A program made the translations under genes and the position numbers. Under the pieces are notes generated by a model, which had not been told where the DNA came from, did not search any database, and saw only the letters and a list, made by a program, of their open reading frames with translations. From Neoconidiobolus thromboides FSU 785 (Eukaryota > Fungi > Entomophthoromycota): a DNA stretch of 64,000 nucleotides. Positions 2,587-47,269 of this stretch are shown here, piece after piece. The stretch is from contig MU626299.1 of assembly GCA_025603075.1 (NCBI GenBank), positions 1 through 64,000 on the forward strand, in the 5' to 3' direction. How positions within the stretch are numbered: the stretch's first letter is position 1; every line of letters starts with the position of its first letter.

Positions 2587-3282
2587 ATGTATCAAAGTTA
2601 TTCTATCACTGATACCCAAACTCTTTACATGCCAAACTTCAGTCATGATCTCCCTTCTTTAAATAGCAATAATTTATCTGATATTAACACTTTTGAAAAT
2701 AACTATATTCCTTTGAGCACTTATGCTTCCCCAAGCCACAAGCGTAGAGCCTTTTCTAATAGTGTCTCACTTCCTTCTATAGGTGAACTAGGACTATTAA
2801 ATACAAATGGCCTTGGAAAAAACTACAGTGGTAACACCTCTATCCCATACACTAAGGACTCAATTATAGGCTATCTAGTTAAGTCACCTAGAAGGGCTAA
2901 ATCCAAAACCATTAATACTACAATTCCTAGAAGAAAGAAAGCAGCTCCAGAACAAAGACAACTTTTAGAAGACGTATTCAAATCCAATTTTTTCCCTACT
3001 ACATCGACACGTATGAGGCTTGCTGACGAGTTAAACATGACTGAACGTTCAGTCCAGATCTGGTTCCAAAACAAAAGATCAGCATTTAGAAAAACAAACA
3101 AAGTACATGAAAGAGTTAGCCCAGGAATTGAGAAAATATTAAAAGGCTCCGCTTTAACTCAATGTTCAACATCTTCTGCACTATCTATTGCCTCTCCTAC
3201 ATCATCATTTTATAATAAAAGTGATGCTTTAAATTCCCCAATCGACTCTATTAGTCAAAGAAATTACAAGTATAGAGTATAG
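2587..3282 (+). CDS. Homeodomain protein HD1 (Q50, non-TALE, Yox1/Yhp1-like), 231 aa, intronless
   Basis: PRRKKAAPEQRQLLEDVF...FPTTSTRMRLADELNMTERSVQIWFQNKRSA. LPSIGEL motif. TATATAAA at 2515-2522. Confidence 0.95.
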   Translation: MYQSYSITDTQTLYMPNFSHDLPSLNSNNLSDINTFENNYIPLSTYASPSHKRRAFSNSVSLPSIGELGLLNTNGLGKNYSGNTSIPYTKDSIIGYLVKSPRRAKSKTINTTIPRRKKAAPEQRQLLEDVFKSNFFPTTSTRMRLADELNMTERSVQIWFQNKRSAFRKTNKVHERVSPGIEKILKGSALTQCSTSSALSIASPTSSFYNKSDALNSPIDSISQRNYKYRV

Positions 3283-4381
3283 TCGAGCCTATTGTTATCA
3301 TCTTACAAATGATGTAACTTATTGTGTGTAAATATCATTTGTTATTCCTTAGAACCAAATAAATTGATTTCCGTTATTAAACTTATTTTATGATTTTTAC
3401 TTTTATAATTGTTTGAAAATTTATAACATAATATTAAAGAAATTAGATAAAAATTACTACTTTTAATGAAATTTAATTTTGTCTCTCAAATAATATTTGA
3501 TCAAGAAATAGATAAATAAATTATTTAAATAGTTCTGATTAAAAAGTGATCTATTTATAAAACTTGGACCATTTCAAAACATTAAATTTAAAGATACATT
3601 ATTAAATTTTAAATACAGCTTATGAGTGAAAATAAAACAAACGGGATTATAATTTCAAACTCAGATATTAATTAAAATTGACCATTAGTGGATTTGCTTC
3701 GCCATAGAACAAAATCAAATCATTACTTAGGTTTTGAAATGGTTGTAAGGATAGAGGAGAGGACTTTACATTCAAACTCAGGTGAAACTTATCTTTTAAA
3801 AATTAAAGTTTTTATTTTTATTTGATTACAGGATGATACTGTTGTTTTAACTTTTGTACTTTAAACACTATTTCATTTAACGTTTTATACTAAGCTATTA
3901 AATTAATTTTTTAATATTAAATTCAATGCTATCATTTAGTTTATTTTAAATGTTATTTGTTATAATTTATATGATTTTTCTTAACTTAAAGTGTAGCGAT
4001 TAAAATAATATATTCCTCATTATACTAAGATATTAAAGAGCTTTCAACTTTGTTATACATAAAGACCAAACTTTGTTTAAACATTTAAACTCGAATATAC
4101 GTTTTTCTCAAAATAGTGATATCCACAATGTTAGCTTTTGCTTTATTCTAATTCAAGTTCATTTTCATAAAAATACCTTTTGAAATAAGCATAATGTAAC
4201 AAGAATGATAATCAAAATGTTAATTTTCTTTCTCAAATATTTTAGTTTTTCATTTAAAATGACCATATTCATCGAAAATTTACTTATAGATTATACTTAA
4301 AATATTTTCATTGAACTATAAAAAATACAACACACACATCTTGTGCTTTTCTTCAAAAAACGGTTCACCAAAATAACAAAT

Positions 4382-4478
4382 GGGGCTGTTTTTTTTGGTT
4401 TCATTATTTTTCCATTTTTTAAGCACTATTTGAGTGGAAAGGTTGTAGTAAAATTCTTAAACAAAAAAATACATCCCC
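4382..4478 (+). mobile_element. ~98-bp MITE
   Basis: GGGG...CCCC ends, TSD AAAT on both sides. Confidence 0.85.
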
Positions 4479-5030
4479 AAATCACATTCCAAAAGCTATT
4501 CGATTTACAACTCTATTTAACTAATACAATCATTATGATCTATTTTATATATCAATCCGAGCAGCTTTATATTATCTGATATTAGTGTATCATTGAAAAG
4601 ATAGTAAATCGTTTAAAAAAAAGCTGAGTTGTTATTTTTGCTTCTTTAACATAAAAATAGGACAAGTGTATTTTAAAATCATGTACTAATATAATAAAAT
4701 ACAAATTAGTCGTTTGATCCCAATATTCATTTGATCCGTACTGTCAAACTTATTGAATTTTCTTTATTGAAAATCAAAAACCTTAATAAAATCAAGCTAA
4801 TGAATTGGCATAGTGTTGATGTTTAAACAGACAAAAAAACAAAAAAAACACCATTGACTTTTAAAAAAATTGTATTTATAGTTTAAACACTTGCTGTTAA
4901 CTGCTGTTAGAATCATTTTGAAATTTAGCCATAATTGATCAAGAAGGGCAAGGTTTTGTAGAATTGAAGTTATTTAAAATGAACATTTCAGAAATTAAGC
5001 CCATTATAAAAATCAAAATATCATACAATA

Positions 5031-5100
5031 CAATATAATATAATATAATATAATATAATATAATATAATATAATATAATATAATATAATATAATATAATA
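5031..5100. repeat. (TAATA)n microsatellite, ~14 units
   Basis: Direct reading. Confidence 0.95.
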
Positions 5101-5949
5101 TTACATGGATTAAATAGCCATGCTCTGTAGCTTTATTTTTTGATAGCACATATTTTTTATTAAATATTCTTACTGTTATTTTATTTAACTTCATGTAAGA
5201 ATATTCAACATTTAGGATCAAATGACTAATAGGATCAAGTGATTAATTTGTATGCTATATAAAAGTCGAAGAAAAATACGACTCAAGGCAGTCAACCTAA
5301 AAAAATAAGACAAAAATCAATAAATCATATAAAACTACTTAAGCTATATTAAATCATCACAAATTAGTAATAGTTTTCAATTTTGTTAAACTTTTGTACA
5401 TATAATTTTTGATAAGCCTGTATTGTATTAATTTTAAAGTTACAAGTTCCAAATATATAGTCATACCAAATTAATTTTTATACTCCTGAAAAAAAACTGT
5501 TTTTTCATTTTTTTTGATAATTGATCAACATTGTAAGCTCAGATTATCAAACCTTAACTTATAATCTTTATGTAAATTGTAATATTAAAAAGTATTAAAG
5601 TGTTTTTTAAATAGTATGATAAAAGCTATCAATATCTCATAATTAATAACATAAAGTGTTAGTATCAGAATTAATATTGTAAGTAATTTTTTGCTTTTAT
5701 TATATATTAAAGGGTTTAAAAAAATCATAAACAAAGCTGGTAAAAAAATCTATTCTTATCATTTATAATTAATTAAATTTTAACTCTATAATATAAATAT
5801 ACATATGAATATTTATGCTTATAAAAATACTTTAAATAGTTTGATATTAGTAAGTTTTAAATTATATAAAGCAGTTTATAAGCTTTATTTAAATAAGCTA
5901 TACATAAAAAAATTGTATTAAGCTTAGGCTATATTAAATAAACAAATAA

Positions 5950-6340
5950 ATAAAATGATAAAAAAATATTATACAATTAAATAAAATAATGATAAAATAA
6001 TAATTTAAAGCTGTAAATCAAAAAAACTCATTAGTATTTTAGCTCAATTTCTAAATCAGAGAAAACTTTAAAAAAATATCCCCACTTACTAAATTTACAA
6101 TTTTATGTATTGATTTGCTTAAAGCCCAGATTTGAATTTTATTGAAAATATGCAGTAATTTTTTAAATATTATTTTAAATATTAAAAAAAATCAAAAACT
6201 AAAATTAAACAACTTAGAGCTATTTTAAATCAGGAATAAAAGTCAATAAATATTAGACTTGAAAAGCATTTAACAGCTAACATGCAGTTTTAGTGACAAA
6301 TAATAATTACAAATATAAAACAAACAATATTAATAACTTC
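5950..6340 (+). pseudogene. Decayed Tc1/mariner transposase C-terminal remnant
   Basis: 6123-6158 reads SPDLNFIENMQ* (Tc1 motif SPDLNPIENLW). Followed by KTKIKQLRAILNQE*KSI...LTANM, resembling the Tc1 C-terminus. Contains stops and indels. Confidence 0.5.
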
Positions 6341-6855
6341 TTGGTTCAAAATTACAATGTTTTGATTATTAGCCATTTAAAATTCAGATATTATTTTAAA
6401 AAATGTTTTTAAAACATAACATTTAACTTTTGGTTTTTGATAACATGATTTTATATTTGTTCTATTTTATGTGTATATTTATATCTGTACTATTTTTATA
6501 AATTTCCAGGTTGGAAAATATAATTTTACTATTGGTTTATATAGCATTTTTTATTTAACTATTAGGTTTTTTGATTAAAATTTATTTTAAAAATAAGAAT
6601 AGAATGTAGTAAACATTTAGGTATTATAATCATACAACTTTACTGCGACTTCTATCTTGAAAAAACTATATAAATTTTAATAATATTCCAGTTTAAAGCA
6701 TTTAAATTCTTTTTCTAGCTATGGACAATCAACAAGTTTAATCCTTTTCATATAATTATCAAATTTTTTTAATTGCTGAAAAATACTTTAATTTTTGAAA
6801 TACTTGACATACTACTTTTCCAGGCTTTAATGTCATAAAAAACTTGAATTTTATA

Positions 6856-6951
6856 CAGGTGTTTTTTGTCTTCATCACCTTTTCCATCTTTCAAGTGCTA
6901 TTTGAGCGAAAAAATTATTGATAAAATCCTTGAACATAGAAATACATCCTC
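6856..6951 (+). mobile_element. ~98-bp MITE, left end degenerate
   Basis: Colinear with the family consensus. Ends ACATCCTC followed by ATAT. Confidence 0.7.
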
Positions 6952-9900
6952 ATATAAAAGTTTTATGACTCTTCAATTTGACTATCCAGCTTTTTTTCTC
7001 ACTTATATTTTCAAACTCTTTTGTTTAAAGCCAAAAGGTAACTTTTTAGAAAGTAGAAATAATATAGATTTTAAGCTTTTTTCCAAAGTATAAACAGCTT
7101 AAATGCAATTGATACTCTTTCATAAATAACCTATTAACAACCAGTATCTCTTAGATTAGTCTTGAGAGTGTTCAATTTTCTATTTTAAATAAAACACATG
7201 AGGCCTATGTATTTAAAGAGAGTAAAAAAACCAGTTTGAAACTCAGAATTTTCTTTTACTATCTCAGTTTAAAGAATTCATTTTTTTAGGAATACTTGCT
7301 AATGATATTATTTTTGAATTAAAATACTAAATTTAAAATAATACTAAAAGATCAGATTGTTAGTAGTAATAGAAGCGAATAAACCAGAGAAAACTTCCGT
7401 AAGATGCTTTTCCTCTTTTTAAGCTAGTCTATTTAGAGAGGGAAAAGGAAAAATAGTTTAATTAAAAATACTTTGCATTTAGAACTATGATTTAAAGTGT
7501 GAAAAGCCCAGATTGGGAACTAAAGGCATTTACAATATTAGTAACGATTTATCCAAATAACATAGACAACTTATAAAAGATGTTGAAAGTTAGAACAAAA
7601 AAATGAAAGGTCTGGCATAAAGAAAACATCCTGACCCTGTGGTTTCTAAAACATTAGCATCGGTTTCAAGGCTCATGGATCAAAGAGCAAAGTAGTTAAA
7701 TTGATTATAAATTTAAAGGAACTGTTTTGAAATTAGTCTCATACAATAGATTCTTCGGCTTTATTCTTAAAAGGGGGTTTATTATACATATTATGTTATG
7801 GTGTTAAAAACATATAAGGGTTATATTCTAAAAAGCACCAAGGTTCAACCTTTTTATCACATTTTATAGCTTTATTTATGTAAATTTCAACAACAACAAA
7901 GTTAAAATATGGTTTATTAATTCTAATATGCATATGTACCGTTATGGTTGGTAAAATGTGCTTAAATTAGTAAAGAGTAGTCCATATAATGACTTGCTAT
8001 GTAAATTGTATTTGAAAACTGATATTTGATTTAAAAGCGTTATAAAAATAACTATGGTTTTAATCAAAACTAAGGTTTTCACTCAAAAAATAGCATCCAT
8101 TGTTCTCTAAGTTAAATTATATTATAATATTCAGTAAGCTTTTGTTGTTAATATATTAGATTTAGGCTAAAATTATGCTATAAGTTAATTGAATTTAAGG
8201 TCTTGGCAAGAGATAGTTGGCTTTGAATAAAGTTAAAAGATCCTAAAAAGTAAGCTAATCAACCTTAATATTACAAATAAACGGAAGTGATTGAATCGTA
8301 TATATTTTGAAGTATGTTAAATTATGTAATAAAATCTCATATAGATCCAAAAAATATGATATGATATTACATTTATTATATTCTCAAAGTAAGCTTATAT
8401 GGCTATTGAATCATCTAAAACCTTAGTTTAATCCTATGTCACCCTTGTGTTATTATTTGTTTATTAAAACATCACATTTCTATACAAAGGCATACTTTAA
8501 CAAAATCCACAAAGGACTAAAATATGTTGGTATCAGAGCTTCAATTAAGTCTATGGTAATGTTCAAATTTAGTGTTCTAATAGCTTTTAATATACGGCTA
8601 CTAGCCCTGACAGGTCCAATATTTAGAAAAATATCTAGCACCACAATGACTATAAATAAAATGATCTATCATCAGTGGTTTAACTTCTATTATAGCTTTA
8701 ATTTCTTTATTTGATCAAAATTATTTACCCGATATAAGCTCTAGATTCAACAAGGTTCGAATATTTATTAGGAAATTGGCACTTTATATCTATCGTATGT
8801 CTAATGATATGGTCTAGACAAATCCAAAGCAGAACATTAATTGTTTTAACATATAAAAAATATCTTTCCTTTTTTATAGTTGGAATTAACTGTTATATGT
8901 TTTTATTATAAATTTTAATTACCTGTTGCTTTTTAGCTATTTTTAAAACTCACTGATCAATAATGATTTCATTTGTCTTCACTATTTAATTGAATCTGCC
9001 TAAACATCAATGAAATACATTTATAGGGATTAGAATTACTTTATAGATATAATCTTAGTATTGATCTTATTTTTAATCTTTAAAACTTATTTCTTATTTA
9101 TTTTTTATAGACCATTAGCACTTGAATTTGTTATTTGAAGTTGAAGTGCTACTTTATAAAATTAAAATAGTAATATCAGATTTCAAGATTTTATGTATTT
9201 AAACTGTTTTCTTTAAAATATTAAAAGCAGTAAAGGAAACAAACTTACAATAATGTATATAATTATATTATTTAGATTTTTTGTGAAACTAGTATTTGAA
9301 TTAAGATATAATAAAGTTGAGATTAGAACTTTGTGCACTCAAAATAACTTACAGTTTTAGGATAGAAAGTCTTATTTAAAGATTGTAACTCACTTATATT
9401 TTATATAAAGTGAAATAAATGACAATATAAGTACTAAGAGTTGAACATTTATTGTCCTTTAAATTATAGCTTTTGAAGGTTTTAATTCGATTATCATTAA
9501 GCACAAAGAAAAACGAATTTGAGCTAATAATAATATTTTTCAAAGAACTAAGATGCAAGCAACTACATAATTAAAACTCTAAATATCAATAACCAATTAC
9601 TCTTTGAAACCTTAATTTTTTAGAACTCTACTTTTTAACACAGTTTTTTCAACGTTCCATTTGTTTATTCTGTTCGCTAAAACAAATACAAAAATAAAAG
9701 CAAATACTACATATTTTAACAAACAAATATAAATGTAATTTTGATCTTTTGAAGTATAAAATTTTATATTTTTTATAAATCAAAGAATACATGGGAAAGT
9801 AATTCCTAAAAACGAAATATTAAAATAATTAATTTAACAAGAATCTATTCATATTTTTAATATAAATTTATCCGAATAAAGACTAGTCTAGATTCTAATT

Positions 9901-11498
9901 AAAGCGAGGATGATATGTAATAGTAGCATATTCTCAAATTATACATAATCATCAAACATTAAATTTTATATCTCTAAGCAAGTTTAGAAAGTATTGATAT
10001 CATCATTTATAAAAAAGTTTAATTACAATAGCCACTGGCTTTCATACCAACTTGAATGCTTCAAGGATGTAGTGTTTGATCCTTACCAAAATAGTTATTA
10101 GCTGACTTTATTTTATAATTAAGAAAATTCCTTCTGTTTCAATAACAAAGGATGTATAAAAAAACCTCAACATTTTATCCCTAATCTTTTGTTTATTAGC
10201 ATTTCTACTTTGCTATGGTACTTGAATAGCGTATTAGGAAATAAATAAAATAAAAGGCGATTTAGTCTTATGTTGAATAGCTTACATCTAAAACATTTTC
10301 GATCGTTTTTATCAATAGAGTTCGCTGAAAGCTATTTATAAGTTATGTAAAATTTTTAATTCATTTCACTATATTCGGGACTACATCTTGTTCTAAAGCA
10401 GTAGAGATGTATTGTCCTGTATTGTTCTGTATTGTAAATATAGCAATTAGAGTGTGTTAATTCAACATTTACAAATTCATTAATAAATAAAAATGTTAAA
10501 TTAAATAATGTATTACTTAATGAAATTTAATAGCAGCTTATTAATCATACTAATTATCATAGACTCACTATAGGCAAAATGCTTGTTAACATACAATATA
10601 TGATAGTGTTTCTATTATTAAAGAAGTAAGGAGCTATTGAGGTGTATTTGTAAAAGCAGCGAAACAAAGGTTCATTTGAAAAAAACGATGATAAACGCAG
10701 AGAATATCATAAAGCGGAATTAAAGAGAATCAGCAACAGAAGGTACTGATTTAATACGAAATCATTGTTTTTTTGTATATACAGTAACTAAGGTTATTTA
10801 TATTTTATTAATAAAATATAAGCATCGCTTATTTACTGTAAACTTTAAAACCCGTATTTTTTTAACTGATTGTTGTAATGCAGTTTTTATTAATAAAATA
10901 GATGACTAAGCTCAAAATTATCAAATTCAAGATTACTTATAAGGAGAGTGGTTAAATATCGCTTCAATTGATTAATAATGTCATTTAACTTTGAAATTGA
11001 ATTTTTATAGGGAGTATTTTATAGTAAATTAATTAAAGGAGCTATTAAAGAACCTGAAGCACACACTTAAATCCTAAATAGAAGACAGAATCAAAAATCT
11101 ATAGATTCACCTATCGGAGAACTGCTATAAAAAGCATTTTAAAATTATAACGGGATTATTCTTCAGTTTCTATCTTGTTTTGTATAATATAAGATTATAT
11201 ATTGGAATTTATCCTAAATTCCATTATTTCTATTTTGATTAATTCTTTTTCTTAATGCAATCTTTTAGCCTAGACCTTTTTTAAGATTTAGAATTCCATT
11301 TAAATGTTATAAAATTAAAATTAGCTAGTAAAATGAAATTTGTAGAAGCTAGAAAATAGAAAATAGAAAATATTACAATTCATTACAGAAAACTCAATTT
11401 ATTAAAAGTTAAAATGATTTTAAATTTATAGATGGTAGAAAGATAAGGTGATGAATTAATATAAGTTGAGGGCGAAAAGAAAAAGTATTATACAAAAA

Positions 11499-15988: not shown

Positions 15989-16089
15989 ATTTGTCTTATT
16001 TTATTTTTTTATAAAACAAGTAAAAAAATGCTTGAACTTATGTTTAGGATTTAACTTTATACTAGCCTTTCTCATTTAACTGTTTTTTT

Positions 16090-34047: not shown

Positions 34048-34148
34048 AGGAATGTATTTTTTTGTTTAAGAATTCTACTAACAATCTTTCTGCATAAGTC
34101 AAGTAGCGCTTAAAATAGAAAAGTGATGAAGCCAAAAAAAATACTCCC
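34048..34148 (-). mobile_element. ~98-bp MITE
   Basis: AGGAATG...ACTCCC, TSD AAAT. Confidence 0.8.
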
Positions 34149-36027: not shown

Positions 36028-36086
36028 ATTAATTTAATCCTTTTTATTATTTTAAAAAATAAAGCTTGTTATTATAAAGTTATTAT

Positions 36087-36812: not shown

Positions 36813-38418
36813 GGCTTTTGATTGTATTAATTGAACTTTGTTTTTATATTAAGTTTTAATATATTTATATACCTCTTTGTTTTTTTATTTATACTCGACT
36901 ATCTATTAATACAATACACCATTTGCAAACCCCACGTGAGTTTCCCCAAATCTCAAAAGCTTAGTTTCAATCGTTTGAAGAATGCGATCTAATTTTAAAT
37001 TTGTAACGAAATCTTTTTAATTGCTTCTTTTTCTCCATTAATATGTTTTAAATTTTAGTTATTTTTTACTTTGGGTGCTTTTTAATATATTTAGTAAAGC
37101 ATAATTTTCTTTTTAAACTGGCTGGTTTTTGGGCAGTTGGCTTTAATATGGTCCAAAAAAGGTGGCTTTTTTATAATGTTTTTTTGGGATTAGTTAAGTT
37201 TGATTTAACTTTGTAGTTGTTGTGAGTTAAGAGTGGGGTAATTAAATTTTATCAATTTTAATCTTAGTAGTATAATAAAAATATAACACTAAGTAACTAT
37301 TATATATATGTTAATATTATATAATACAACCTGTTTTACGAAATGACAATGTCCTTATCCTATTGCATTATAAAGGTTGATATATTTGCTTGTTATAATA
37401 ATACCTTTAATATAGCTTAAATTATAAACAAACTAATATAACATCTCAACAATCTAACTTCTTTAATCATGGATCGAAATTTTAAATACTCTTTTATATA
37501 AATCTATTATAATACAGTAGTGACACAAAATTAGCTTTCATAGAGTTCAAAAAAATAATATGATTTTAAAATTAGCACATGTGTTTTTAATATACTATGA
37601 TCTTATAATACAATTGATATAAAACTTAAAAATAATAATTATGAGCTATTTTATATTGATTTTTATTAATTTTAAGTCTTATATTACACTTTGTTTATAA
37701 AACTATAATACAAGACATATTAATTTTAAAATTATTTAGCTTTTTTAAATTACAGCTAATTTAATTGCCATTTTACAAGACTAAGATTATTTTAGCTGCT
37801 CCAGATTTTTTGTAGCTTACTTCAAATATTTATTTGAATAAAATTGAATAAAATTAATTAAAATGCAATATCTTTAAATTTGCTTTGAAATTAAGCATTT
37901 AACTTTGAATAACCATTTTTCAATCATTAATAATTAAAAGCATTGCATAAAGACTAAGTATTAAAAATTAATTATATAAATAATAATTCAGTTATAAAAA
38001 TTACTATTAAAAAAGTTATAATAGCTGTATTAATACTTTTTTTTTACTAAATTTAAAAATTGAATTAAATATAACTAAGCTTTATAAATTTTATTTGTGC
38101 TTAAATTAGTAGCTTATATGGTATTACTATAAAACTATATTCAATAAATATATAGCGATGTTTAGATTAATTTCAGAATTTAACTAAAAATTAATCTAAA
38201 TTTTAGATTTCTTTATTTCCTTTAAATAATTTTTTAGTTATACATTTTACATCATTTCTATTGAATGTTTGATGAAGATAAAAATTTTAAATTGAATATA
38301 AATAGAAATCGATGTTTATTCAAAGATAATTAATAGTAATAGTGTATTAATATTACAGCCTATTATTAAAATATAAAAAAAGTAAGAATAAGTAAATTAA
38401 AACTATCATATAATATAT

Positions 38419-38512
38419 GGGGGTGTATTTGTGTCTAGGAATTCTACTAACATTTTTTCCGCTCAAATAGTACTTAAAAGATGTAAGTAATGAAGCCAAA
38501 AAAAACACTCCT
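38419..38512 (-). mobile_element. ~98-bp MITE
   Basis: GGGGGTGTA...CACTCCT, flanks ATAT/GTAT. Confidence 0.75.
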
Positions 38513-38591
38513 GTATATTAAATAATTTAATTGTTTTACTAAGGTTTGATAAAAAAAATAATAAATACTTATTAAATAGTATATATATGGG

Positions 38592-39057
38592 TGTGAAATC
38601 TGGTACTCAGTGATTGGAGTCAAAAGTAGTTTTTGCTTGGTTGACTATGCTATAGGTCGAAAGGTCTTAGTTTATGTGACTAAGATAAACTTGAATTATC
38701 AAGAATAACATGTAATAAGCTACAGACTATGTAAGACAAATAGAATAGACAATACTAATCTAAGATCTATGTAAAGTACTATCAGAAAGGTTTAATAGCT
38801 TCATTAAAGGTACAAAACATCAAGGAATAATTCAATTTAAAAACCTCAAGCTACTATGTTCTAGAATCTCTTTTATACTTCGACAAGTACAAATATCAAA
38901 ACAGAGAGATAATGTCCTTCGGAATCACATGGCAGAAACCCTCATACCAAACCAAAACAAAAGCATGAAATCAATTGGCTCTGAACTCGAGAACATAACA
39001 ACTTAAGTGATTGTTATGCTATGATCAATCATGAAACTGGTTAAGCGATATTTCACA
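38592..39057 (+). mobile_element. Solo LTR (subfamily B), 466 bp
   Basis: TGTGAAAT...ATTTCACA (TG..CA ends with short inverted termini). TSD not matched. Confidence 0.85.
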
Positions 39058-39377
39058 TAGATTTAAAAAAAGTTAAAATAAATAGTAGTTTAAATTCTAA
39101 TTTTTTTTGCTAAGAATTATAAAAAAATATAATTAATGAATATTTTGGAAATCTTTTATAATAAAAACAGCTTTAAAGCATTAAGTAAAATAAAAAATAT
39201 TAGTTAATTAATTTAAAAATTTAATATTTTTATTTGTAAATATAACAAAATCAATAATTTAACTATTAATAGTAAAAAAACAGATGTAATTTTTAAAAAG
39301 TATAAAAAAATAAAGATATAAAAAAATAAAAACTACTGAAAAGTGTTTATATTTTATCAAACAATAATAAACTATAT

Positions 39378-39475
39378 AGGGATGTATTTTTGTGTTTAAG
39401 AATTTTACTAACAACTTTTCTGCTCAAATAGTGCTTAAAAAATAGAAAAAGTGATAAAGCCAAAAAAACATCCCC
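39378..39475 (-). mobile_element. ~98-bp MITE
   Basis: AGGGATG...CATCCCC, flanks ATAT/ATAC. Absent from the paralogous segment at 520-1000. Confidence 0.8.
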
Positions 39476-39729
39476 ATACTGTTATCTAGTATATAATAGA
39501 TCAAAAAAATAATATAGTTCTAATTAAAGTTATAAAGTCTATAGAAAATAAAAAATTTAAAAGTTAATTCCAGCTTATATTATAAAAATAATAAAAAATT
39601 AAAAGTTTCAATATTTATAAAGCAAGTAGGTAGTTTTTTAAATGATAGAAATCAATCATTAAATGTTAATGTTATTTAAACTATTAGTAGCTGAATTGAT
39701 AAATAATAAAGGGCAAATAGTTATAATAA

Positions 39730-40193
39730 TGTAAGATATCGCTTTGTCAGCTCCGTGGTTAATTATAGCATAATAGCCACCTAAGCTGTTGTATTCTCGA
39801 GTTCAGAGACAATCAATCTCATACTCTTATTTTGATTTACTATGAGAATTTCTATCTTCCTCTCAAAGAATATTGCCTTCTTATTTTTATATCTATACTT
39901 GTCGGAGTATAAAAGAGATTCTAGAACATAGTAGCTTGAGGTTTTTAAATTGAATTATTGCTTAATGTTTTGTACCTTTAATGAAGCTATTAAACCTTTC
40001 TGATAGTACTTTACATAGATCTTAGATTAGTATTGTCTATTCTATTTGTCTTACATAGTCTGTAGCTTATTACATGTTATTCTTGATAATTCAAGTTTAT
40101 CTTAGTCACATAAACTAAGACCTTTCGACCTATAGCATAGTCAACCAAGCAAAAACTACTTTTGACTCCAATCACTGAGTACCAGATTTCACA
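39730..40193 (-). mobile_element. Solo LTR, inverted relative to the 38592 copy, chimeric A/B
   Basis: 39965-40193 is the exact reverse complement of 38592-38820. The remainder is subfamily A type. Confidence 0.85.
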
Positions 40194-40314
40194 TAAATAA
40201 GACAATACTTTTTATACAAATTAATTTAAACTTTTGATCATTTTAAATAGTCTGGGAGAATAACAAAAATATGAACTTAGTTTAATAAGTTATATTTTAG
40301 TTATTTAAATATTT

Positions 40315-40413
40315 GAGGATATTTTTTTTACTTCATTACTTTTTACATTTTTTTAAGCACTATTTGAGTGGAAAAATTGCTAGTAAAATTCTTAGACATA
40401 AAAATATATCCCC
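40315..40413 (+). mobile_element. ~98-bp MITE
   Basis: GAGG...CCCC ends, TSD ATTT. Confidence 0.85.
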
Positions 40414-40593
40414 ATTTATTATATTTTAATTTATTTTTTATAATTTAGATAACAGTCATATATTATTTTCATAAATTAAAATTTATTAACTATATAGCTT
40501 AAAGCATACAAGTATTAGCTTTGTTTTAATACTATAATTATTTTACTTAACTTTTATAAATTTTATAATTTTGAACTTATTAATTTAATATCT

Positions 40594-40688
40594 AGAGATG
40601 TATTTCTTTGTTTGAGGGTTTTATTGATAATCTTTTCATTCAAATAGTGCTTGAAAAATGGAAAAAGTAATGAAGCCAAAAAAACACC
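40594..40688 (-). mobile_element. ~98-bp MITE, degenerate
   Basis: Colinear with the consensus, ends eroded. Confidence 0.65.
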
Positions 40689-41158
40689 ATTTATTAACAT
40701 TTTCTGCTGTTTTTATATAAACTGCTTATTATTAGAATTAATTAACTAAAGTTTAAAAAAATTGTTAAAGTATTTTATATAAAAATTAAGTTTCGTAAAA
40801 CATTATATTACAAGTTTGTTTTAGTTATTGAGGCTAAAAAATTTTGACTTCTAATAAATAAATAATTAAGTTTTACTGTTTTTTTACTAAGCATTAAATT
40901 TCATAGTTTTAAGCAATTATATTTAATCTTTAAGTTAAAATAATGATTTCTTAAATATTTTCATTTTATATTTTAACAAAAAAAACTGTTATTTTTAAGT
41001 TAATTATAATTTAATTTACTAGAAAACAGAGAAAAATGATGAAACTAAAAAAACACCTTTATTTAATAATAATAATAATAATATCATTAATTTAAAAATT
41101 AAGTTTATATGTGTATTTTTAAGCATATGTTCTAATTTAGAGAATTAAAACTTTATAT

Positions 41159-41255
41159 GAGGAAGTTTTTTTTGATTTCATTGCTTTTTCCATTTTTCAA
41201 GCGTTATTTAAGTGGAAAGATTGTTAGTAAACTCTTAAACAAAAAATACAACCTC
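41159..41255 (+). mobile_element. ~98-bp MITE
   Basis: GAGG...CCTC ends, TSD ATAT. Confidence 0.85.
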
Positions 41256-41608
41256 ATATAATTGTTTTTTACTTTTTAATTCAAATTAATTTTCAGTTTT
41301 TGCATAATTAACAAAACCATAGTTATTTAATGGTTTTATTTAAGTAGTTGATTAAAAATATGATATTTAAGTTTAATTGCTTTATGTCAGTTATAGAGGG
41401 CTGGAAATTCAAAAAAAGTTTGGAATAAGTTATTGCAAAAATAAAGTACAAAAAAAATTACTTAAAAAAATATAAAATAATAATAATGATAATCAATATA
41501 AATAAAAAACACAAATATTCATATTAAAATATTCTTTAATATAACTATAAAAAAACTTATGATAAAAAGTTTAAAATGTAAATAAAATTTGAAACTTAGT
41601 TTTATAAT

Positions 41609-41708
41609 GAATTATATTTTTATGTCTAGGAATTTTACTAACAATTTTTCCACTCAAATAGCGCTTAAAAAATAGAAAAGTAATGAAATCAAAAAAAACA
41701 TTCCCCCC
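41609..41708 (-). mobile_element. ~98-bp MITE, one end eroded
   Basis: Consensus core, ends CCCCCC followed by ATAT. Confidence 0.7.
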
Positions 41709-42012
41709 ATATTATGTTATTTTTTATAAATAGTTTCTTTTTTGAAAGTTATGATTTGAAACTAAACTTTTGTATATAATAAAAAAATTATATTGTAGTT
41801 TATAAAGTCGTTATTTTTAATACTTTATACTAGAATATTAAAAGTGTGTAATTGAAAAATATTACAAGTCAGTTACAGTCTCTAATTTAAGCAAATTAGG
41901 CTTATAATGGGACTAAATAGCCTTTCTCCTTTATGCTTTCAAAACATTACGTGTTGGCTTTTAGCGGCTATATCCTATAAAGTATATTCCCCCTTTAAAA
42001 ATTTATAAATAT

Positions 42013-42122
42013 GGGAGTGTTTTTTTGACTTCATCATTTTTTCCATTTTTAATTTCCATTTTTAAGCACTATTTAAGCGGAAAAATTGTTAGTAAAATTC
42101 TTAAACACAAAAATACATCCTC
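42013..42122 (+). mobile_element. MITE with ~12-bp internal duplication
   Basis: GGGAGTG...ATCCTC, TSD ATAT. TTTCCATTTTTA is duplicated. Confidence 0.85.
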
Positions 42123-43389
42123 ATATAATGTTTTACACCATCTTAAAAAATGTACAAAACTCTAACAGTTAACAATTTCAAACAAAAAACTCAATAAAGA
42201 CTTGACAAAATACTGCAAATTTAATCATCTTGTTGAATTTTTGCTTTGCAAATGTTCAATCTTGGTGGATAATATATTCTTCAAAAAGATATACTATAAC
42301 TTAAATCACTCAGTCTATAAAGAGTTTTCGGGTCTAAGCAATTGTTCAAGAGCTTTTTTTGTATTAAAATAAATATACGGATAAAAAATCATTAACTCCA
42401 CTATTTTTAGTTTTAAAATTAAAATTGATATCAATAACTTTATGACTAGATCAACATAAGTGCTACTAATCTATTATCGACTTTGAACTAAATTGAGGTG
42501 AGGTATCCTTTAATTATCTTCAATTAGTACTAAATAAGCTTTACGATCTATTATCTATAATAATAGAAAGGATAATAAAATAGTAAAATATTATAGCATT
42601 GTTAAATTAAATGATCTAACTATTTTTAATAAAGCCATGAATTTTACGGGCTAAAGTATTACTAAACTAAGTTAATAAATGATGTATTATATTATAATGT
42701 AATATGATATTGATTTATTTCCAATGTATGGAAGTGGGGTTCAATAATCAAATATAACAAAGCTAAAAGATGTAATAGCGAATAAAACATAAAATTATAC
42801 ATAAGAAAAAGTAATGAATCGATACTTTAAAACATTAATAAATTATTTTTTTTATTAAAGTCAATCTAGAAATAATTTCATGTTGAAATTTTTTGCCTTG
42901 TTTTATATTACTCAAGTTTATACTATTGCTATTTTTAAAAACAATAAGGGAGTATAAAAAATAAGTTCGATAGTTTGATTTAAGAGTGGGTCAATAACCC
43001 TTAGTAAAAAAGTACCATCTCAATATATTACAAAAGTTAAGTAAAAATGTTTTATTTTTACAACTTTTAAGGGCAAAAATAAACCGGAATAATATTTTAA
43101 TGAATTATAAATTTATGATGTTACACTCACCTAATCCAATGATATAATTTCAAGTAGTAAAATTTGAAATATTTTTACTTTTATGAAACTCAATAGGATA
43201 TGTGATTAAGGGGTGAACCATGAGTTTGAAATTTTCTGTTTATTCTTAATATGTAAATATAAATGCTAATAAATAGCGTAAAGCATCATTAGGTAGAAGT
43301 CACAATTTTCTATATAGCAACCCTATAAAAAGATGCTCACTAACTTATATTAGATCTAACTTTTTAAATATTAAAAGATCAAAAATCCA

Positions 43390-43890
43390 ATGCTTAAGGG
43401 TAATATTATGAACATGGCAGAAGGAATACATTGTTATCATTATAATTTTCATTCTTCTGTAAATGAAATTTCATATATTAATCCCTACTCAAATTCTAAT
43501 GATCGTTGTAAAGGCTCTATTAAGTTACCAAGTATCTCTGAGTTATTTAAAGAATCAGAACTAAAACCGATAAGTGATACATCTCATATTGATACTCCTA
43601 CCAAATCTAAATCAAGCAGTTCTGAGCTTGAAAGTAATTACCTAAGCAATCAAAGTAGCAGTATGAAATATTATAACGATTACAGTAACCCAGTAGCAAA
43701 TAAGATAGGAAAACCGTACAAACCTAGACTTCGTAAATCGGACTATCAAACCCATGTACTTGCTCAAGTGTTTTCAGCTAACCAATTCCCGGATCGTAAA
43801 TTAAGGGTTTGTCTGGCTAATTTATTAAACCTTGACCAAAGAAATATCCAAATTTGGTTTCAAAACAAGCGTCAAAAATTACGAGGCTAA
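43390..43890 (+). CDS. Homeodomain protein HD5 (Q50), 166 aa, intronless
   Basis: KPRLRKSDYQTHVLAQVF...FPDRKLRVCLANLLNLDQRNIQIWFQNKRQK. KLPSISELF motif. TATAAAA at 43324-43330. Confidence 0.95.
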   Translation: MLKGNIMNMAEGIHCYHYNFHSSVNEISYINPYSNSNDRCKGSIKLPSISELFKESELKPISDTSHIDTPTKSKSSSSELESNYLSNQSSSMKYYNDYSNPVANKIGKPYKPRLRKSDYQTHVLAQVFSANQFPDRKLRVCLANLLNLDQRNIQIWFQNKRQKLRG

Positions 43891-46795
43891 CATAGTCCTT
43901 TAAAAAATCATTATAACTGTTTTATGATATTCCCTCAGTCGGAAGTATTCTACACTTTTTCTTCTACTTTTTAAAAAAATTATATTAAATCACTGTAATT
44001 TATAGGATTTTTAATGTTTATATTAATGTATTATAATTTGAACTTAATCTTAATTATTAAAAATTGTTTTCCTATTATTTTAATTAATCATTCATTCATT
44101 GTGATAATATTATTTAATCTTAATACTTTATTTTAAGTTATTTATTTAATAACTTTATATTATTAAATAGCCTAATAATAATATAAAATTATAACTTTAA
44201 ACATAATATCGAAAAGTCACTTTTTTAAATATTATTTATCGTACAACTTCTAAAAAATGTTACAGTGTTAAAGTTACAACCTTTATAAAACTTAAATTTT
44301 AACCGGGGTTAATTAAACTAGATAATTATTATTTGGTTAACTTTGTTTATTTTTATCCGATCCTTTATAAAGCACAGGGTAGTTATCATTGTAATTAATT
44401 TCAAATATCTTATTAAACAACTATGACATTTATTAACTAAATATATATATACTTTCTATGTTTCAAAATTTATTGTAATGAAATCTTTAAGTCTATTTAC
44501 TTCAAATTCAAACAATATATAATAAAACGTTAATAGAAATAATTTGTAAGTAATTTATCATAATAAATGGGGCTATATCATAATCATTAAATAAGAAAAT
44601 GGAGAAATATTTAAAACATATTAATAAGTTAGATAGGTTGGAGAAATCGTACAAAAAAAGGCAATAATAGAAAAACAGAAATTGATTGGCTTAAATTTAA
44701 TTAATTCTAAATTTTTTAAGTCAAACTAACTTCAATATTAAGATAAAAAATGAAATGAAATAAAAGAGCAATATAAAAATTTGCAAAACTAAATTAGAAA
44801 CATTAATATCATTTTATCAACAATTTCAATATTATTAAAACAAAACAAAACAAAATGTTATTTTAAAATAAATAAAAGTAAATAAGTTAAAAATAAATAA
44901 TGGAAAAAAACATAAAACTATCCTTAAACAGGTTAATGTTTTAAGGGGCGAATTCAGGTGATTTAAGTAAAAATGCAAAAGTTAACCATAAATTGAGTTA
45001 TAACATTACAACTTTTTAAAAAAGATTGTTAAAATTAACCTCCAATGTTGATTAAATTTTACTATTTATCCACACCATTGTACCAAATATAAATTGAATA
45101 TAATAGATATTGCCCATATAATAATTGTAATAAAAGCTACATATTTAATTCAATTATTTCATTTTTAGGTTCTAATTAATTTGTTGGTTATTATATTTAT
45201 AAATATATATGATAACACTGTTTTTTTTATTAAAACTGTTAAATCATTATCATTTTAATTCAAACTCAACGTTTAAAAAACGTTTGTAATAAATTAAAAT
45301 AGACTGGGCTAATATTAATTTATCTTGAACTTTTGATCCGAATTAAGTTGTGAAAGTTTCTCAAAAAATACTCTCCGTTTATTAGTCAATAATTTTTGTG
45401 TTAAATCCCAAGGCATAAAACTAAGTCTACTTTTTAAAATAGCTTTAGCATAGTGTGACCTACACAAACCTGTAATTAAAAAGTAAATACCATACTTAAA
45501 ATAACAAAAAAATAAGATCGATTTAAAACTCAATAAACCCATAACTTAGATTATGATTTCATAGGTTTTGATAATTTTATTTGTTATATTTATATAACAG
45601 CAATAATATCTGATTATACTAAATGAAAAAAGACCCATTCAGTTATCATCTCATATTGAATAAAGAGTCTAGAGTGATTAAAATAGATATAAATTGCAAT
45701 TAATATGTTATGAAATGGGGTGCTCCAATAGAAATAGTCAAATAAATTGAAACAAATAAAATTGAATATGGTATAGTTCCATGAAAATAAGCTCAGTTAA
45801 TCTGGAGTTAAAACAAATTAAAATTAGACTTTAAGGACTTTGACTACATAGAATTGTTCTAAGTTGGGATACAAATAAAGTAAATAAATGTTGGTATGTT
45901 AACAAAATATACCTATCTATATGTTTTAAGAGGTATGTTTATTAAATAATTCTAGTACTATAATTTATTGAGTTAAAGTTGAAAAGAATTTTGATTAATT
46001 AATTAATATATCTAAAAAAAATAATGTATTTATTACAATTTGAATAAACACATTGACTACAGAAACTTATACTGTCTTAATATTATAACTAGATTTTGTA
46101 AAAAATAGTTATAAAATCAATTTTATCTTGCCTTTCTTTTTTCGACTATATATCATCACATAAAAAGCATATAAGAATAGTCCCGTTAATTAATATATTT
46201 TTCATTAGATCATTACTTTCACTCTTAGTTATGAAACTTTAATAAGTTCTTTGTTATAAATTGATGATATTATAAATTATAAAGATTAATTCTTTAATTT
46301 CTGACTTCTTATTAAATTGGTCACTTAACAAAAAAAATTGTTTTAAAAAAATTTAAGGAGAAAAGTTACTATGGCTTAATAACTAAGCGTACACTCTATT
46401 TACAATCACTAAACGTAAATATAAATTACAAACTAAGATAACTTGACACCCATGAGAACCAACAAATAGTTAAATGTTTGCTTTTAATAGGCTTATAAGC
46501 CAATAAACAATACATTACCTTTTCTATAAAAAATAGGGTTTAATTAAGTATTAACCCTGAATCTAAACCTGCATTATAATTATTTCAAATAGAAAAAGGG
46601 GATAATGAAATTTAGAAGATATAGCCATATAGGGGAAAAACTTATCTCGAATGCTTAAGTTAAGGAGCTAAAAAAAGTTGTAAGCTTATTTGAAAATTTT
46701 ACTAATTTTAATTGTCCAAAAGTTACGATTAAAAAGTATATAAGAGAGTAAATAATCAAATATTAATTTTTAATTGTACTATAAAAAAATTAAAA

Positions 46796-47269
46796 ATGAA
46801 CTACTTAAATCAATTCTCGTTAAGCCATAAAATCTATTCCTACTTTGATTATCCCAATGATTTATACTCTGATATCAAATTACCCGAATTGAAAAATTTA
46901 ACTTATGGTGATGAGTCTTTGGAAAAATTACCTAGTATGTCAGAACTAATCAACTGGTCTCTTTTAAACAATCATATCTCGCCAACGCCCTATCATAAGC
47001 GTAATAGATCTAGTGTATATAATGAATTATCATCTAATTCAATATATTCGAATGAAAATTTATTTCTAGAATTCCCAGGGATGAGAGTTAGAAAATCTTT
47101 AAACCAAGTAGATTCTTTAGAAAGAGCTTATATGATTACTCCTTTCCCTAATCGAAGCTTAAGAGTGCAATTAGCTAAATCTCTTAACTTAAAACCCCGT
47201 ACTATCCAGATTTGGTTTCAAAATAGACGCCAAAAAGCTAAACGATCAAACTCCATCTCTTCAAATTAA
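46796..47269 (+). CDS. Homeodomain protein HD6 (Q50), 157 aa, intronless
   Basis: GMRVRKSLNQVDSLERAY...FPNRSLRVQLAKSLNLKPRTIQIWFQNRRQK. KLPSMSELI motif. TATATAAG at 46737-46744. Confidence 0.95.
   Translation: MNYLNQFSLSHKIYSYFDYPNDLYSDIKLPELKNLTYGDESLEKLPSMSELINWSLLNNHISPTPYHKRNRSSVYNELSSNSIYSNENLFLEFPGMRVRKSLNQVDSLERAYMITPFPNRSLRVQLAKSLNLKPRTIQIWFQNRRQKAKRSNSISSN

What the first reader, a model, noticed from the sequence alone, without database searches (positions are those of the whole stretch)
2587..47269. A six-gene homeobox cluster in a fungal genome
Seen: six separate, short (147-231 aa), intronless homeobox genes in ~45 kb, five on + and one on -. All keep R5, Q12, L16, F25-P26, R31, L38, R43, Q46-I47-W48-F49-Q50-N51 and R53. 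Outside the homeodomain they are highly diverged, so the duplications are old and all six ORFs remain intact. Established: model yeasts and moulds have few, mostly dispersed homeobox genes apart from mating-type pairs. The (A/S)(V/I)QIWFQNKRxA helix resembles yeast Yox1/Yhp1. Inference: this is an independently evolved homeobox array in an early-diverging fungus, perhaps patterning developmental stages (spore types, host vs saprotrophic growth).
Basis: partly seen in the sequence, partly recalled or inferred. Interest (0 to 1): 0.88.

Follow-up and report, generated by a model that had tools for sequence, protein, structure and literature searches.

The report
Loose six-gene homeobox cluster, Neoconidiobolus
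Six small, intact homeobox transcription-factor genes, at least two of them transcribed, sit within 45 kb of the insect-pathogenic fungus Neoconidiobolus thromboides; they are a real local expansion of a fungal gene family that also has members elsewhere in the genome, and nothing shows they work like an animal Hox cluster.

Summary
Six intronless ORFs of 147-231 aa each hold a full 60-residue homeodomain (Pfam E 1e-13 to 4e-17).

The window is the first 64 kb of scaffold MU626299.1 of Neoconidiobolus thromboides FSU 785 (Entomophthoromycotina, about 25% GC).

The six belong to a family of small homeodomain proteins with glutamine at homeodomain position 50 (Q50). Most carry a short N-terminal motif, LPS(I/M/L)xx(L/F). 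The family also occurs in Mucorales, Basidiobolus, Entomophthora and Conidiobolus.

At least four more members lie on three other scaffolds, so six of at least ten sit in 44.7 kb. That is strong clustering, but unrelated genes lie between them and one is on the opposite strand.

HD4-6 fall in an Entomophthoromycotina-specific subfamily and HD1-3 in the broader family. The 58-column tree cannot say whether the six form one exclusive lineage.

RNA contigs cover HD5 and HD6 exactly and nothing between them. Word shares suggest HD1-3 are transcribed too. A roughly 9-10% diverged second copy seen in other samples shows purifying selection (pN/pS about 0.14 on a partial list).

GenBank holds four of the six only as 58-64 aa fragments.

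Verdict: a lineage-specific, locally duplicated transcription-factor cluster. A developmental patterning role and a Yox1 relationship remain untested. Other first-stage notes of this scan flagged the same stretch and further homeobox loci in this genome.

The parts
2587..3282 (+). HD1: 231-aa homeodomain gene. Homeodomain at 2920-3099; LPSIGEL motif at 2770-2790.
   Evidence: ORF. PF00046 E 9e-16. Motif coordinates. GenBank holds only a 61-aa partial model, P0244. RNA run X5 holds 13% of the words of 2400-12200, about the combined length of HD1 and HD2; this is indirect evidence.
11499..11999 (-). HD2: 166-aa homeodomain gene, the only one on the minus strand. Homeodomain at 11625-11804; INFMLN motif at 11961-11978.
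   Evidence: It is annotated only as a 62-aa model. It groups with HD3 in the reduced tree (83/61) but is unresolved in the larger tree.
27030..27473 (+). HD3: 147-aa homeodomain gene. Homeodomain at 27243-27422; LNFILN motif at 27057-27074.
   Evidence: It is annotated only as a 58-aa partial model, P0275. RNA run X5 holds 23% of the words of 26000-30000, about 0.9 kb.
35584..36027 (+). HD4: 147-aa homeodomain gene. Homeodomain at 35842-36021; LPSITEL motif at 35692-35712.
   Evidence: It is annotated only as a 64-aa model, P0276. It falls in the Entomophthoromycotina-specific clade (94/96). No expression data were obtained for it.
43390..43890 (+). HD5: 166-aa ORF (annotated as 158 aa starting at 43414). 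Homeodomain at 43714-43887; LPSISEL motif at 43525-43545.
   Evidence: An RNA contig of X5 covers 43427-43895 with no mismatch at word depth 2986. X6 contigs cover 43315-43976. Depth is zero in the flanking intergenic DNA and there are no joints.
46796..47269 (+). HD6: 157-aa homeodomain gene (GenBank model P0005 is identical). Homeodomain at 47072-47251; LPSMSEL motif at 46928-46948.
   Evidence: An RNA contig of X5 covers 46804-47319 with no mismatch at depth 58. In the diverged second copy, 13 of the 19 listed differences in codons 8-70 are at third codon positions and 12 of the 19 are synonymous.
4375..54245 (.). MITE-like repeat field around the cluster: two families of about 119 nt (12 and 8 copies, both orientations), plus a 1.6-kb element with inverted terminal arms at 38592-40193.
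   Evidence: None of these repeats overlaps a homeobox ORF. They stop near 54.2 kb, where gene density and GC rise.

Best explanation
The stretch holds six paralogous genes for small, DNA-binding, typical (non-TALE) homeodomain transcription factors with glutamine at homeodomain position 50 (Q50).

They belong to a fungal family found in Mucoromycota, Zoopagomycota and some chytrids. Its hallmarks are small size, usually no introns, a short N-terminal motif LP(S/P)(I/M/L)xx(L/F), and a recognition helix reading (V/I)QIWFQN(K/R/Q)RQ.

In Neoconidiobolus thromboides this family has grown to at least ten genes, mainly by local duplication. Six remain loosely linked in a MITE-rich, gene-poor 45 kb, with unrelated genes between them. 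The others are dispersed, one pair 11 kb apart.

Two old subfamilies sit side by side: HD1-3 are of the pan-fungal type and HD4-6 of an Entomophthoromycotina-specific type.

Shown here:
- The genes are intact.
- At least HD5 and HD6 are transcribed as short unspliced mRNAs, at very different levels.
- HD6 evolves under purifying selection, even in its N-terminal half.

Inferred:
- Each protein binds TAAT-type sites through R5, I47, Q50 and N51.
- The conserved N-terminal motif is a short helical docking peptide. It resembles the eh1 motif (FSIxxIL) that recruits Groucho/Tup1-type WD40 co-repressors, so the proteins would act mostly as repressors.
- The paralogues would differ in when they are expressed and which partner they dock.
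- The clustering reflects duplication history rather than a proven shared regulation.
For: Identity of the genes: Pfam hits and invariant residues. PDB matches are to typical homeodomains only. The AF2 model of paralogue P0010 has three homeodomain helices at pLDDT above 95 and a short helix on the ISDL of the motif.

Genome: scaffold MU626299.1 of GCA_025603075.1. A paralogue on another scaffold of the same assembly is named Neoconidiobolus thromboides FSU 785.

The family beyond the window:
- P0010, P0314, P0346 and P0343 lie on scaffolds MU626294.1, MU626331.1 and MU626753.1. Their full ORFs are 117-199 aa and all carry LPS[IL]xx[LF].
- Mucorales relatives carry LP(S/P)ISD(L/I)F.
- Entomophthora muscae mini-homeodomain proteins carry RLPSIRELF.
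- Conidiobolus coronatus has a 214-aa gene with RLPSIHSLF.
- Basidiobolus has at least 11 models, including a convergent pair 2.3 kb apart.

Subfamilies: HD4-6, P0343, four E. muscae proteins and P0025 form a clade (94/96). HD1-3 fall in the broad fungal family (82/84).

Expression: gene-restricted RNA contigs with no mismatch and no joints, plus word shares for HD1-3.

Constraint on HD6, codons 8-70: 12 synonymous against 7 non-synonymous listed differences over 37 against 155 sites, so pN/pS is about 0.14. The motif is kept as LPSVSDL in the second copy.

Age of the duplications: homeodomain identity among the six is 33-57% and there is no DNA-level repeat across the genes.
Against: - Function was not tested. 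Neither DNA binding nor repression is shown, and the eh1 comparison is recalled from the literature, not tested.
- HD2 and HD3 lack the LPS motif.
- No direct RNA evidence was obtained for HD4. For HD1-3 there are only word shares, which cannot say which part of the query stretch is held.
- The pN/pS value rests on the partial variant list the tool printed, for one gene.
- Genome-wide counts come from word-indexed protein searches and unverified scan notes, not from a full-genome HMM scan. 'At least ten' is a lower bound, and the share of the family inside the cluster could be well under 60%.
- Contigs carry no strand, so the transcript orientation is assumed from the ORFs.
Confidence: 0.72

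Rival explanations
1. This is a functionally integrated, Hox-like cluster. Linkage would be retained by selection because the six genes share enhancers or a chromatin domain and are deployed in a coordinated or colinear way across developmental stages (hyphae, primary and secondary conidia, resting spores, growth in the host).
For: - Six of at least ten family members lie in 44.7 kb, five on one strand.
- Relatedness follows gene order: HD2 and HD3 are adjacent and sister in one tree, and HD4-6 are adjacent and fall in one clade.
- Two subfamilies old enough to be shared with Entomophthora are still adjacent.
- Each gene has 3-15 kb of ORF-free flanking DNA.
Against: - Unrelated genes lie between the members and HD2 is inverted.
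- HD5 and HD6, only 2.9 kb apart, differ about 50-fold in contig depth in the same RNA run. The tool warns that contig depth is a poor measure of expression.
- The flanks are full of MITE-like repeats, which explains the gene-free space more simply.
- No second homeobox gene lies within 10 kb of the relatives sampled in C. coronatus and E. muscae.
- Other family members are dispersed in the same genome.
Confidence: 0.1
2. This is a homeodomain-based mating-type or self-recognition locus, as in Basidiomycota and as proposed for Glomeromycotina. Highly diverged alleles would be kept by balancing selection.
For: DNA runs X2 and X4 and RNA run X6 each hold two versions of HD5 and HD6. One is identical to the window and one is about 9-10% diverged. 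In X4 the two have equal depth, and their flanks diverge beyond alignment. The listed HD6 differences lie mostly in the N-terminal half.
Against: - There is no TALE-type (HD1-class) partner; all six have 60-residue homeodomains with no three-residue insertion.
- There are no divergently transcribed pairs.
- The differences are mostly synonymous (pN/pS about 0.14), the opposite of diversifying N-terminal specificity regions.
- The runs with two versions have contig totals of 39-47 Mb, against 25-29 Mb for the runs without. This fits a second diverged genome or haplotype throughout, not a special locus.
- The source strain's RNA run shows one version only.
Confidence: 0.04
3. These are neutral leftovers: redundant duplicates drifting toward loss in a repeat-rich compartment, with no individual function.
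For: - Sequences outside the homeodomain are very diverged.
- Branches are long for HD4-6.
- The genes lie in a MITE-rich, gene-poor region.
- Four of the six were annotated only as fragments.
Against: - All six keep long open frames in a 25% GC genome, where stop codons are frequent.
- All keep every DNA-contacting homeodomain residue.
- HD5 is covered at very high contig depth.
- Differences show a third-position bias.
- The N-terminal motif is conserved with Mucorales and Entomophthora.
Confidence: 0.05

Closest known systems
Small LP(S/P)I-motif homeodomain proteins of Mucorales, Glomeromycotina, Kickxellomycotina and Basidiobolus (uncharacterised; for example Rhizopus delemar RO3G_16317, and Benjaminiella, Radiomyces, Cunninghamella and Dichotomocladium proteins)
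   Same: - The homeodomain signature is the same: K(R/K)KRA...Q...L..VF..T.FPST..R..LG..LGM(S/T)PR(T/A)(V/I)QIWFQNKRQ.
- They are small, and most carry an N-terminal LP(S/P)ISxL(F) motif and/or an LxIxNLL-like motif.
- The N. thromboides paralogue P0010 is 67-68% identical to them across the homeodomain.
   Different: - The six window genes are far more diverged: 40-57% identical to P0010 across the homeodomain.
- HD4-6 belong to a separate long-branch subfamily seen in this sample only in Entomophthoromycotina, plus one protein of unknown source, P0025.
- No named Mucorales species appeared more than twice among the listed hits.
Yox1/Yhp1 (S. cerevisiae) and Yox1 (S. pombe): homeodomain cell-cycle repressors
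   Same: - They are small or medium-sized fungal Q50 homeodomain repressors that use a short peptide N-terminal to the homeodomain to dock a partner (Mcm1 or MBF) (PMC3566586, PMC2726434).
- One metagenomic relative carries JGI's label 'homeobox protein YOX1/YHP1'.
   Different: - In Yox1 the Mcm1-binding peptide lies immediately before the homeodomain and depends on three phenylalanines (PMC3566586). Here the conserved motif is LPSIxEL, about 50-90 residues upstream of the homeodomain.
- No Yox1 sequence was compared directly, and a Swiss-Prot fold search did not return Yox1. Orthology is untested.
Animal Hox/ParaHox/NK homeobox clusters
   Same: Several paralogous homeobox genes lie near each other, mostly on one strand, with relatedness following gene order.
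   Different: - The homeodomain class is different; animal sequences form a separate branch at 97-100% support.
- There is no hexapeptide motif.
- Unrelated genes are interspersed and one member is inverted.
- No evidence of colinear or coordinated expression was obtained.
Basidiomycete HD1/HD2 mating-type loci, and the HD pair proposed as the mating-type (MAT) locus of Rhizophagus
   Same: Clustered fungal homeobox genes. Diverged second versions exist in some samples.
   Different: There is no TALE-like HD1 class member and there are no divergent pairs. The differences between versions are mostly synonymous.

Membership tests
Homeodomain, typical non-TALE class (PF00046) | Pfam score above the gathering threshold over about 57 positions | tested here: met
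   All six score 50-62 bits against a cut-off of 22.9.
Homeodomain, typical non-TALE class (PF00046) | The DNA-contacting and core residues R5, L16, W48, F49, N51 and R53 are present, the domain is 60 residues long, and there is no three-residue insertion between helices 1 and 2 | tested here: met
   Invariant columns are listed. The alignment of all six with P0010 has no internal gaps.
Small LP(S/P)I-motif homeodomain family of early-diverging fungi (unnamed) | N-terminal LP(S/P)(I/M/L)xx(L/F) motif | tested here: met
   The motif is present in HD1, 4, 5 and 6 and in all four other N. thromboides paralogues. It is absent from HD2 and HD3, which carry (I/L)NF(M/I)LN instead.
Small LP(S/P)I-motif homeodomain family of early-diverging fungi (unnamed) | The homeodomain groups with the family in a tree | tested here: inconclusive
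   All six lie in the 43-row fungal group (82/84). In the quick tree HD2 and HD3 lie inside a starred 17-row set (96*). HD1 and HD4-6 are on long branches. Only 58 columns are available.
Hox-like homeobox cluster | An uninterrupted tandem array of homeobox genes in one orientation | tested here: not met
   TLDc, Zn2Cys6, cyclin-like, GH16 and other genes lie between the members, and HD2 is on the opposite strand.
Hox-like homeobox cluster | ANTP-class homeodomain | tested here: not met
   Animal Hox, Arx, Isx and NK sequences separate from all the fungal sequences (97/87 to 100/98).
Hox-like homeobox cluster | Coordinated or colinear expression | not tested
   Only contig presence and depth for HD5 and HD6 in two RNA runs. 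No stage series was available.
Basidiomycete-type HD mating-type locus | A divergently transcribed pair of one HD1 (TALE-like) and one HD2 gene | tested here: not met
   All six are of the typical 60-residue class. Five are on the same strand, and gaps between members are 2.9-15 kb.
Basidiomycete-type HD mating-type locus | Hyperdiverged alleles with variable N-terminal specificity regions | tested here: inconclusive
   Two versions about 9-10% apart occur in runs X2, X4 and X6. The listed HD6 differences are mostly synonymous, and the larger contig totals of those runs suggest a genome-wide cause.
Yox1/Yhp1 | Orthology of the homeodomain to Yox1/Yhp1 | not tested
   No Yox1 sequence was available from a tool. 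The only hints are a JGI label on P0354 and the absence of Yox1 among the Swiss-Prot fold hits.
Yox1/Yhp1 | An aromatic Mcm1-docking peptide directly N-terminal to the homeodomain (PMC3566586) | tested here: inconclusive
   Aromatic residues do occur within about 20 residues upstream of most of the homeodomains (sequences). They form no conserved pattern in the alignment.

The most novel reading that the evidence does not exclude
This would be an old fungal homeobox cluster kept together by selection. Two subfamilies that predate the split of Neoconidiobolus and Entomophthora would have stayed linked because the genes share regulatory DNA or a chromatin domain, and they would be switched on in sequence across the fungus's cell types (hyphae, forcibly discharged conidia, resting spores, growth in insects). 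It would be an independent, non-animal case of clustered homeobox regulators of development.
Probability: 0.08. Interest if true: 0.8.

Novelty: new member of a known kind. Interest (0 to 1): 0.42.

Why it matters
Fungal homeobox genes are usually few and scattered, apart from mating-type pairs. A loose six-gene, non-mating-type cluster therefore gives a concrete place to ask how transcription-factor families grow in early-diverging fungi, where homeodomain-like factors are reported to be more expanded than in Ascomycota (PMC12638772).

The work also defines an unnamed, widely conserved family of small homeodomain proteins that carry a short N-terminal docking-like motif. That motif is directly testable.

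It also shows that public annotation truncates four of the six genes to fragments that hold only the homeodomain or part of it, so counts of such genes in these genomes are unreliable.

It does not, on present evidence, reveal a new kind of system.

Tried and rejected
- Rhizophagus or another Glomeromycotina as the source. This was suggested by the 25% GC and a Mucoromycota-like GH16. It was rejected when the scaffold accession and a named paralogue of the same assembly identified N. thromboides.
- Searching papers for the assembly accession, for homeobox expansions in Rhizophagus, Conidiobolus or early-diverging fungi, and for C. thromboides transcription factors. Nothing on this cluster was found.
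- Profile search of 1.84 billion representative proteins with the six genes. The top of the list is dominated by proteins with several homeodomains, and it gave no extra paralogues beyond P0244, the fragment model of HD1.
- AF2 model plus Swiss-Prot fold search, meant to test the Yox1 idea. It returned only animal and plant homeodomain proteins, aligned through disordered regions, and was uninformative.
- Trees on the 58-column homeodomain. Most deep forks are open, and AU tests reject neither 'six as one clade' nor the alternatives.
- Exact-sequence look-up of the GH16 neighbour and of HD1-5. They are not on record because the public models differ from the ORFs.
- tRNA and Rfam scans of the window found nothing.
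- Hox-like and mating-type readings were considered and ranked low, for the reasons given under rival explanations.

Full report
**What is there**

The window is very AT-rich, at 22-29% GC, and has few long ORFs: only 32 of 70 aa or more in all six frames. They are HD1 2587-3282 +, HD2 11499-11999 -, HD3 27030-27473 +, HD4 35584-36027 +, HD5 43390-43890 + and HD6 46796-47269 +.

Each encodes a 147-231 aa protein with one PF00046 homeodomain near its C-terminus, with E 2e-13 to 4e-17. A six-frame motif scan finds no seventh copy or obvious pseudogene.

**Which genome**

HD6 is identical to a GenBank protein, P0005. It lies on scaffold MU626299.1 (128,731 bp) of assembly GCA_025603075.1, and window position equals scaffold position.

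The best hit outside the window, P0010, lies on scaffold MU626294.1 of the same assembly and is named Neoconidiobolus thromboides FSU 785. This species was formerly Conidiobolus thromboides, an insect-pathogenic member of the Entomophthoromycotina. So the 'early-diverging fungus' part of the reading is right.

**Annotation state**

Public models exist for all six genes, but four are fragments:
- HD1: 61 aa (P0244)
- HD2: 62 aa
- HD3: 58 aa (P0275)
- HD4: 64 aa (P0276)

Only HD5 (158 aa) and HD6 (157 aa) are close to the full ORFs.

**Surroundings**

Unrelated genes lie between the homeobox genes:
- a TLDc protein (18593-19927)
- a Zn2Cys6 factor (21042-23147)
- a 298-aa gene of unknown function
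- a cyclin-like protein (31009-31728)
- a 411-aa gene
- a GH16 glucanase (36087-36812)

Gaps between successive homeobox genes are 8.2, 15.0, 8.1, 7.4 and 2.9 kb.

The intergenic DNA holds two families of about 119-nt MITE-like repeats, with 12 and 8 copies in both orientations, and a 1.6-kb element with inverted terminal arms. All of these lie between 4.3 and 54.2 kb, and none overlaps a homeobox ORF. There are no tRNA genes and no Rfam matches.

**What family**

Outside the homeodomain the six are nearly unalignable, but short motifs recur. LPS(I/M)xEL occurs in HD1, 4, 5 and 6, and (I/L)NF(M/I)LN in HD2 and 3.

The same LPS motif is found across the family:
- In all four other N. thromboides paralogues I could recover. 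Their full ORFs are 117-199 aa with no interruption.
- In Mucorales relatives, as C(S/T)LP(S/P)ISD(L/I)F.
- In Entomophthora muscae mini-homeodomain proteins, as RLPSIRELF.
- In a Conidiobolus coronatus gene, as RLPSIHSLF.
- In Basidiobolus, as LPPI(S/N)HL on the C-terminal side of the homeodomain.

By rough residue frequencies a seven-residue pattern like this would turn up by chance in fewer than 1 in 10,000 proteins of this size. It is therefore inherited and conserved.

An AF2 model of P0010 has confident homeodomain helices (pLDDT above 95) and a short helix on the ISDL of the motif. The nearest solved structures are ordinary paired-like or engrailed-type homeodomains.

**Is it a cluster or part of a dispersed family?**

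It is both. My searches name four further family members in this genome:
- P0010 is alone within 20 kb.
- P0346 and P0314 are 11.3 kb apart on one strand of MU626331.1, with five unrelated genes between them.
- P0343 lies on a 5.4-kb contig.

Unverified first-stage notes of this scan list four other homeobox loci in this genome, holding seven genes in all, as two pairs, one further locus with two genes and a single. Some may be the same genes.

So at least ten members exist and six of them lie in 44.7 kb. The contig totals of the DNA runs (25-29 Mb) suggest a genome of roughly that size; this is my inference. Ten randomly placed genes would then put about 0.02 in any one 45-kb stretch. The enrichment is real, but the pattern is loose linkage with other genes in between. 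It recurs on a smaller scale elsewhere in this genome, and in Basidiobolus as a convergent pair 2.3 kb apart.

Around the single relatives sampled in C. coronatus and E. muscae, no second homeobox gene lies within about 10 kb.

**One lineage?**

Homeodomain identity among the six is 33-57%. Their identity to P0010 is 40-57%, while P0010 is 67-68% identical to the Mucorales proteins.

In the richest tree:
- HD4, 5 and 6 fall with P0343, four E. muscae proteins and one protein of unknown source in a long-stemmed clade (94/96).
- HD1-3 sit in the broad fungal family (82/84).
- HD1 pairs with P0346 (89/72) and HD5 with P0343 (97/83).

Animal homeodomains are clearly separate (97/87 to 100/98).

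AU tests do not reject holding the six together (p 0.11; p 0.24). An exclusive HD4-6 clade scores slightly better than the free tree. With 58 columns the question cannot be settled.

What can be said is this. The array contains two old subfamilies, one of them shared with Entomophthora. Relatedness broadly follows gene order, as another first-stage note proposed. There is no DNA-level similarity between the copies.

**Expression and constraint**

In the single read-laying run, on 42600-47600, RNA run X5 (same organism label as the source) gave exactly two contigs. One covers 43427-43895 at word depth 2986 and the other 46804-47319 at depth 58. Both have no mismatches, gaps or joints, and depth is zero everywhere between them. 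RNA run X6 covers the same two genes. The silent intergenic stretch argues against DNA carry-over.

Run X5 also holds 23% of the sampled words of 26000-30000, about 0.9 kb, which fits HD3. It holds 13% of 2400-12200, about 1.3 kb, which fits HD1 plus HD2. These are indirect. HD4 has no expression data.

DNA runs X2 and X4 and RNA run X6 contain, besides a near-identical version, a second version of both genes that is about 9-10% diverged: 28/295, 42/494, 42/476 and 48/484 differences. Of the listed HD6 differences in codons 8-70, 12 are synonymous and 7 are not, over about 37 and 155 sites. That gives pN/pS of about 0.14 on a partial list. The motif changes only conservatively, from LPSMSEL to LPSVSDL. 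This argues for purifying selection even outside the homeodomain.

**The second version**

In X4 the two versions have equal depth, and that depth equals the depth of single-version intergenic contigs. The flanks of the second version do not align. The runs that show it have larger contig totals (39-47 Mb) than those that do not (25-29 Mb). The source strain's RNA run shows one version only.

The simplest reading is a second diverged genome or haplotype in those samples: a hybrid, a diploid or a mixture. A locus-specific polymorphism is less likely. I could not test this.

**How it most likely works**

Shown:
- six intact genes
- complete DNA-contacting residues in all six
- transcription of at least two
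- constraint on one, in both halves of the protein

Inferred from established homeodomain biochemistry: the proteins bind TAAT-core sites through R5, I47, Q50 and N51.

Inferred by analogy: the conserved N-terminal peptide is a docking motif. Its pattern (hydrophobic, P/S, S, I, x, x, hydrophobic, hydrophobic) and its short predicted helix resemble the eh1 motif, through which many animal homeodomain repressors bind Groucho-type WD40 co-repressors. Tup1 is the fungal counterpart. The eh1 comparison is recalled knowledge, not a test made here.

Yox1 of budding yeast offers a conceptual parallel: a short peptide N-terminal to the homeodomain docks on Mcm1 (PMC3566586). However, its position and its aromatic character differ.

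I put about 0.85 on 'lineage-specific, locally duplicated, functional homeodomain transcription factors' and about 0.35 on the co-repressor docking step.

**Comparison and novelty**

I found no paper on this cluster. A general excess of homeodomain-like factors in early-diverging fungi is already reported (PMC12638772).

Local expansion of a transcription-factor family is a known kind of event, so I file this as a new member of a known kind. It has some extra interest because non-mating-type homeobox clusters are unusual in fungi, and because the family and its motif are uncharacterised.

It fails the tests for a Hox-like cluster: it is interrupted, it has mixed orientation and it is not ANTP class. 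It also fails the tests for a basidiomycete-type mating locus: there is no TALE partner and there are no divergent pairs. Yox1 orthology remains untested.

Noticed in passing
window 43269-43782 and 46662-47172 (runs X2, X4, X6): Other DNA and RNA samples hold two versions of HD5 and HD6. One is identical to the window and one is about 9-10% diverged, at equal depth in X4, with flanks that do not align. The runs that show this have 39-47 Mb of contigs, against 25-29 Mb for the others. This suggests a second diverged genome or haplotype (a hybrid, a diploid or a mixed culture) in those samples.
   Followed up: partly
window 2920-3099, 11499-11687, 27237-27410, 35833-36027: The public gene models for HD1-4 are 58-64 aa fragments holding only the homeodomain or part of it, although the ORFs are 147-231 aa. 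Many 'partial' homeodomain models of the same kind exist for other JGI genomes of early-diverging fungi. Homeobox gene counts and lengths in these annotations are therefore unreliable.
   Followed up: partly
window 4375-54245: There are two families of about 119-nt MITE-like repeats (12 and 8 copies, both orientations) and a 1.6-kb element with 328-nt inverted arms that are 96% complementary (38592-40193). All are confined to the gene-poor part of the window and stop near 54.2 kb, where gene density and GC rise.
   Followed up: partly
window 31009-31728 (-); L007 3438-3818: A weakly scoring cyclin-like gene (PF00134/PF02984, E about 1e-4 to 3e-5) lies between HD3 and HD4. In Basidiobolus a PHO80-type cyclin gene (PF08613) lies about 6 kb from a homeobox pair. 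The two are different cyclin families, so this is probably coincidence.
   Followed up: no
L007 10001-12652 (Basidiobolus meristosporus MCFE01000242.1): A convergent pair of homeobox genes of the same family lies 2.3 kb apart, with ORFs of about 300-346 aa that carry LPPI(S/N)HL motifs C-terminal to the homeodomain. At least 11 partial homeodomain models from this species appeared in one search, so the family is strongly expanded there too.
   Followed up: partly
window 36087-36812 (-): The GH16 glucanase next to HD4 is annotated as a 194-aa model starting at residue 48 of the ORF. The 241-aa ORF begins with a signal-peptide-like stretch, so the public model may lack its secretion signal.
   Followed up: no
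window 43427-43895 versus 46804-47319 (run X5): HD5 has a word depth of about 2986 and HD6, 2.9 kb away, about 58 in the same RNA run. HD5 may be among the more abundant transcripts of that sample. The tool warns that contig depth is a poor measure of expression.
   Followed up: no
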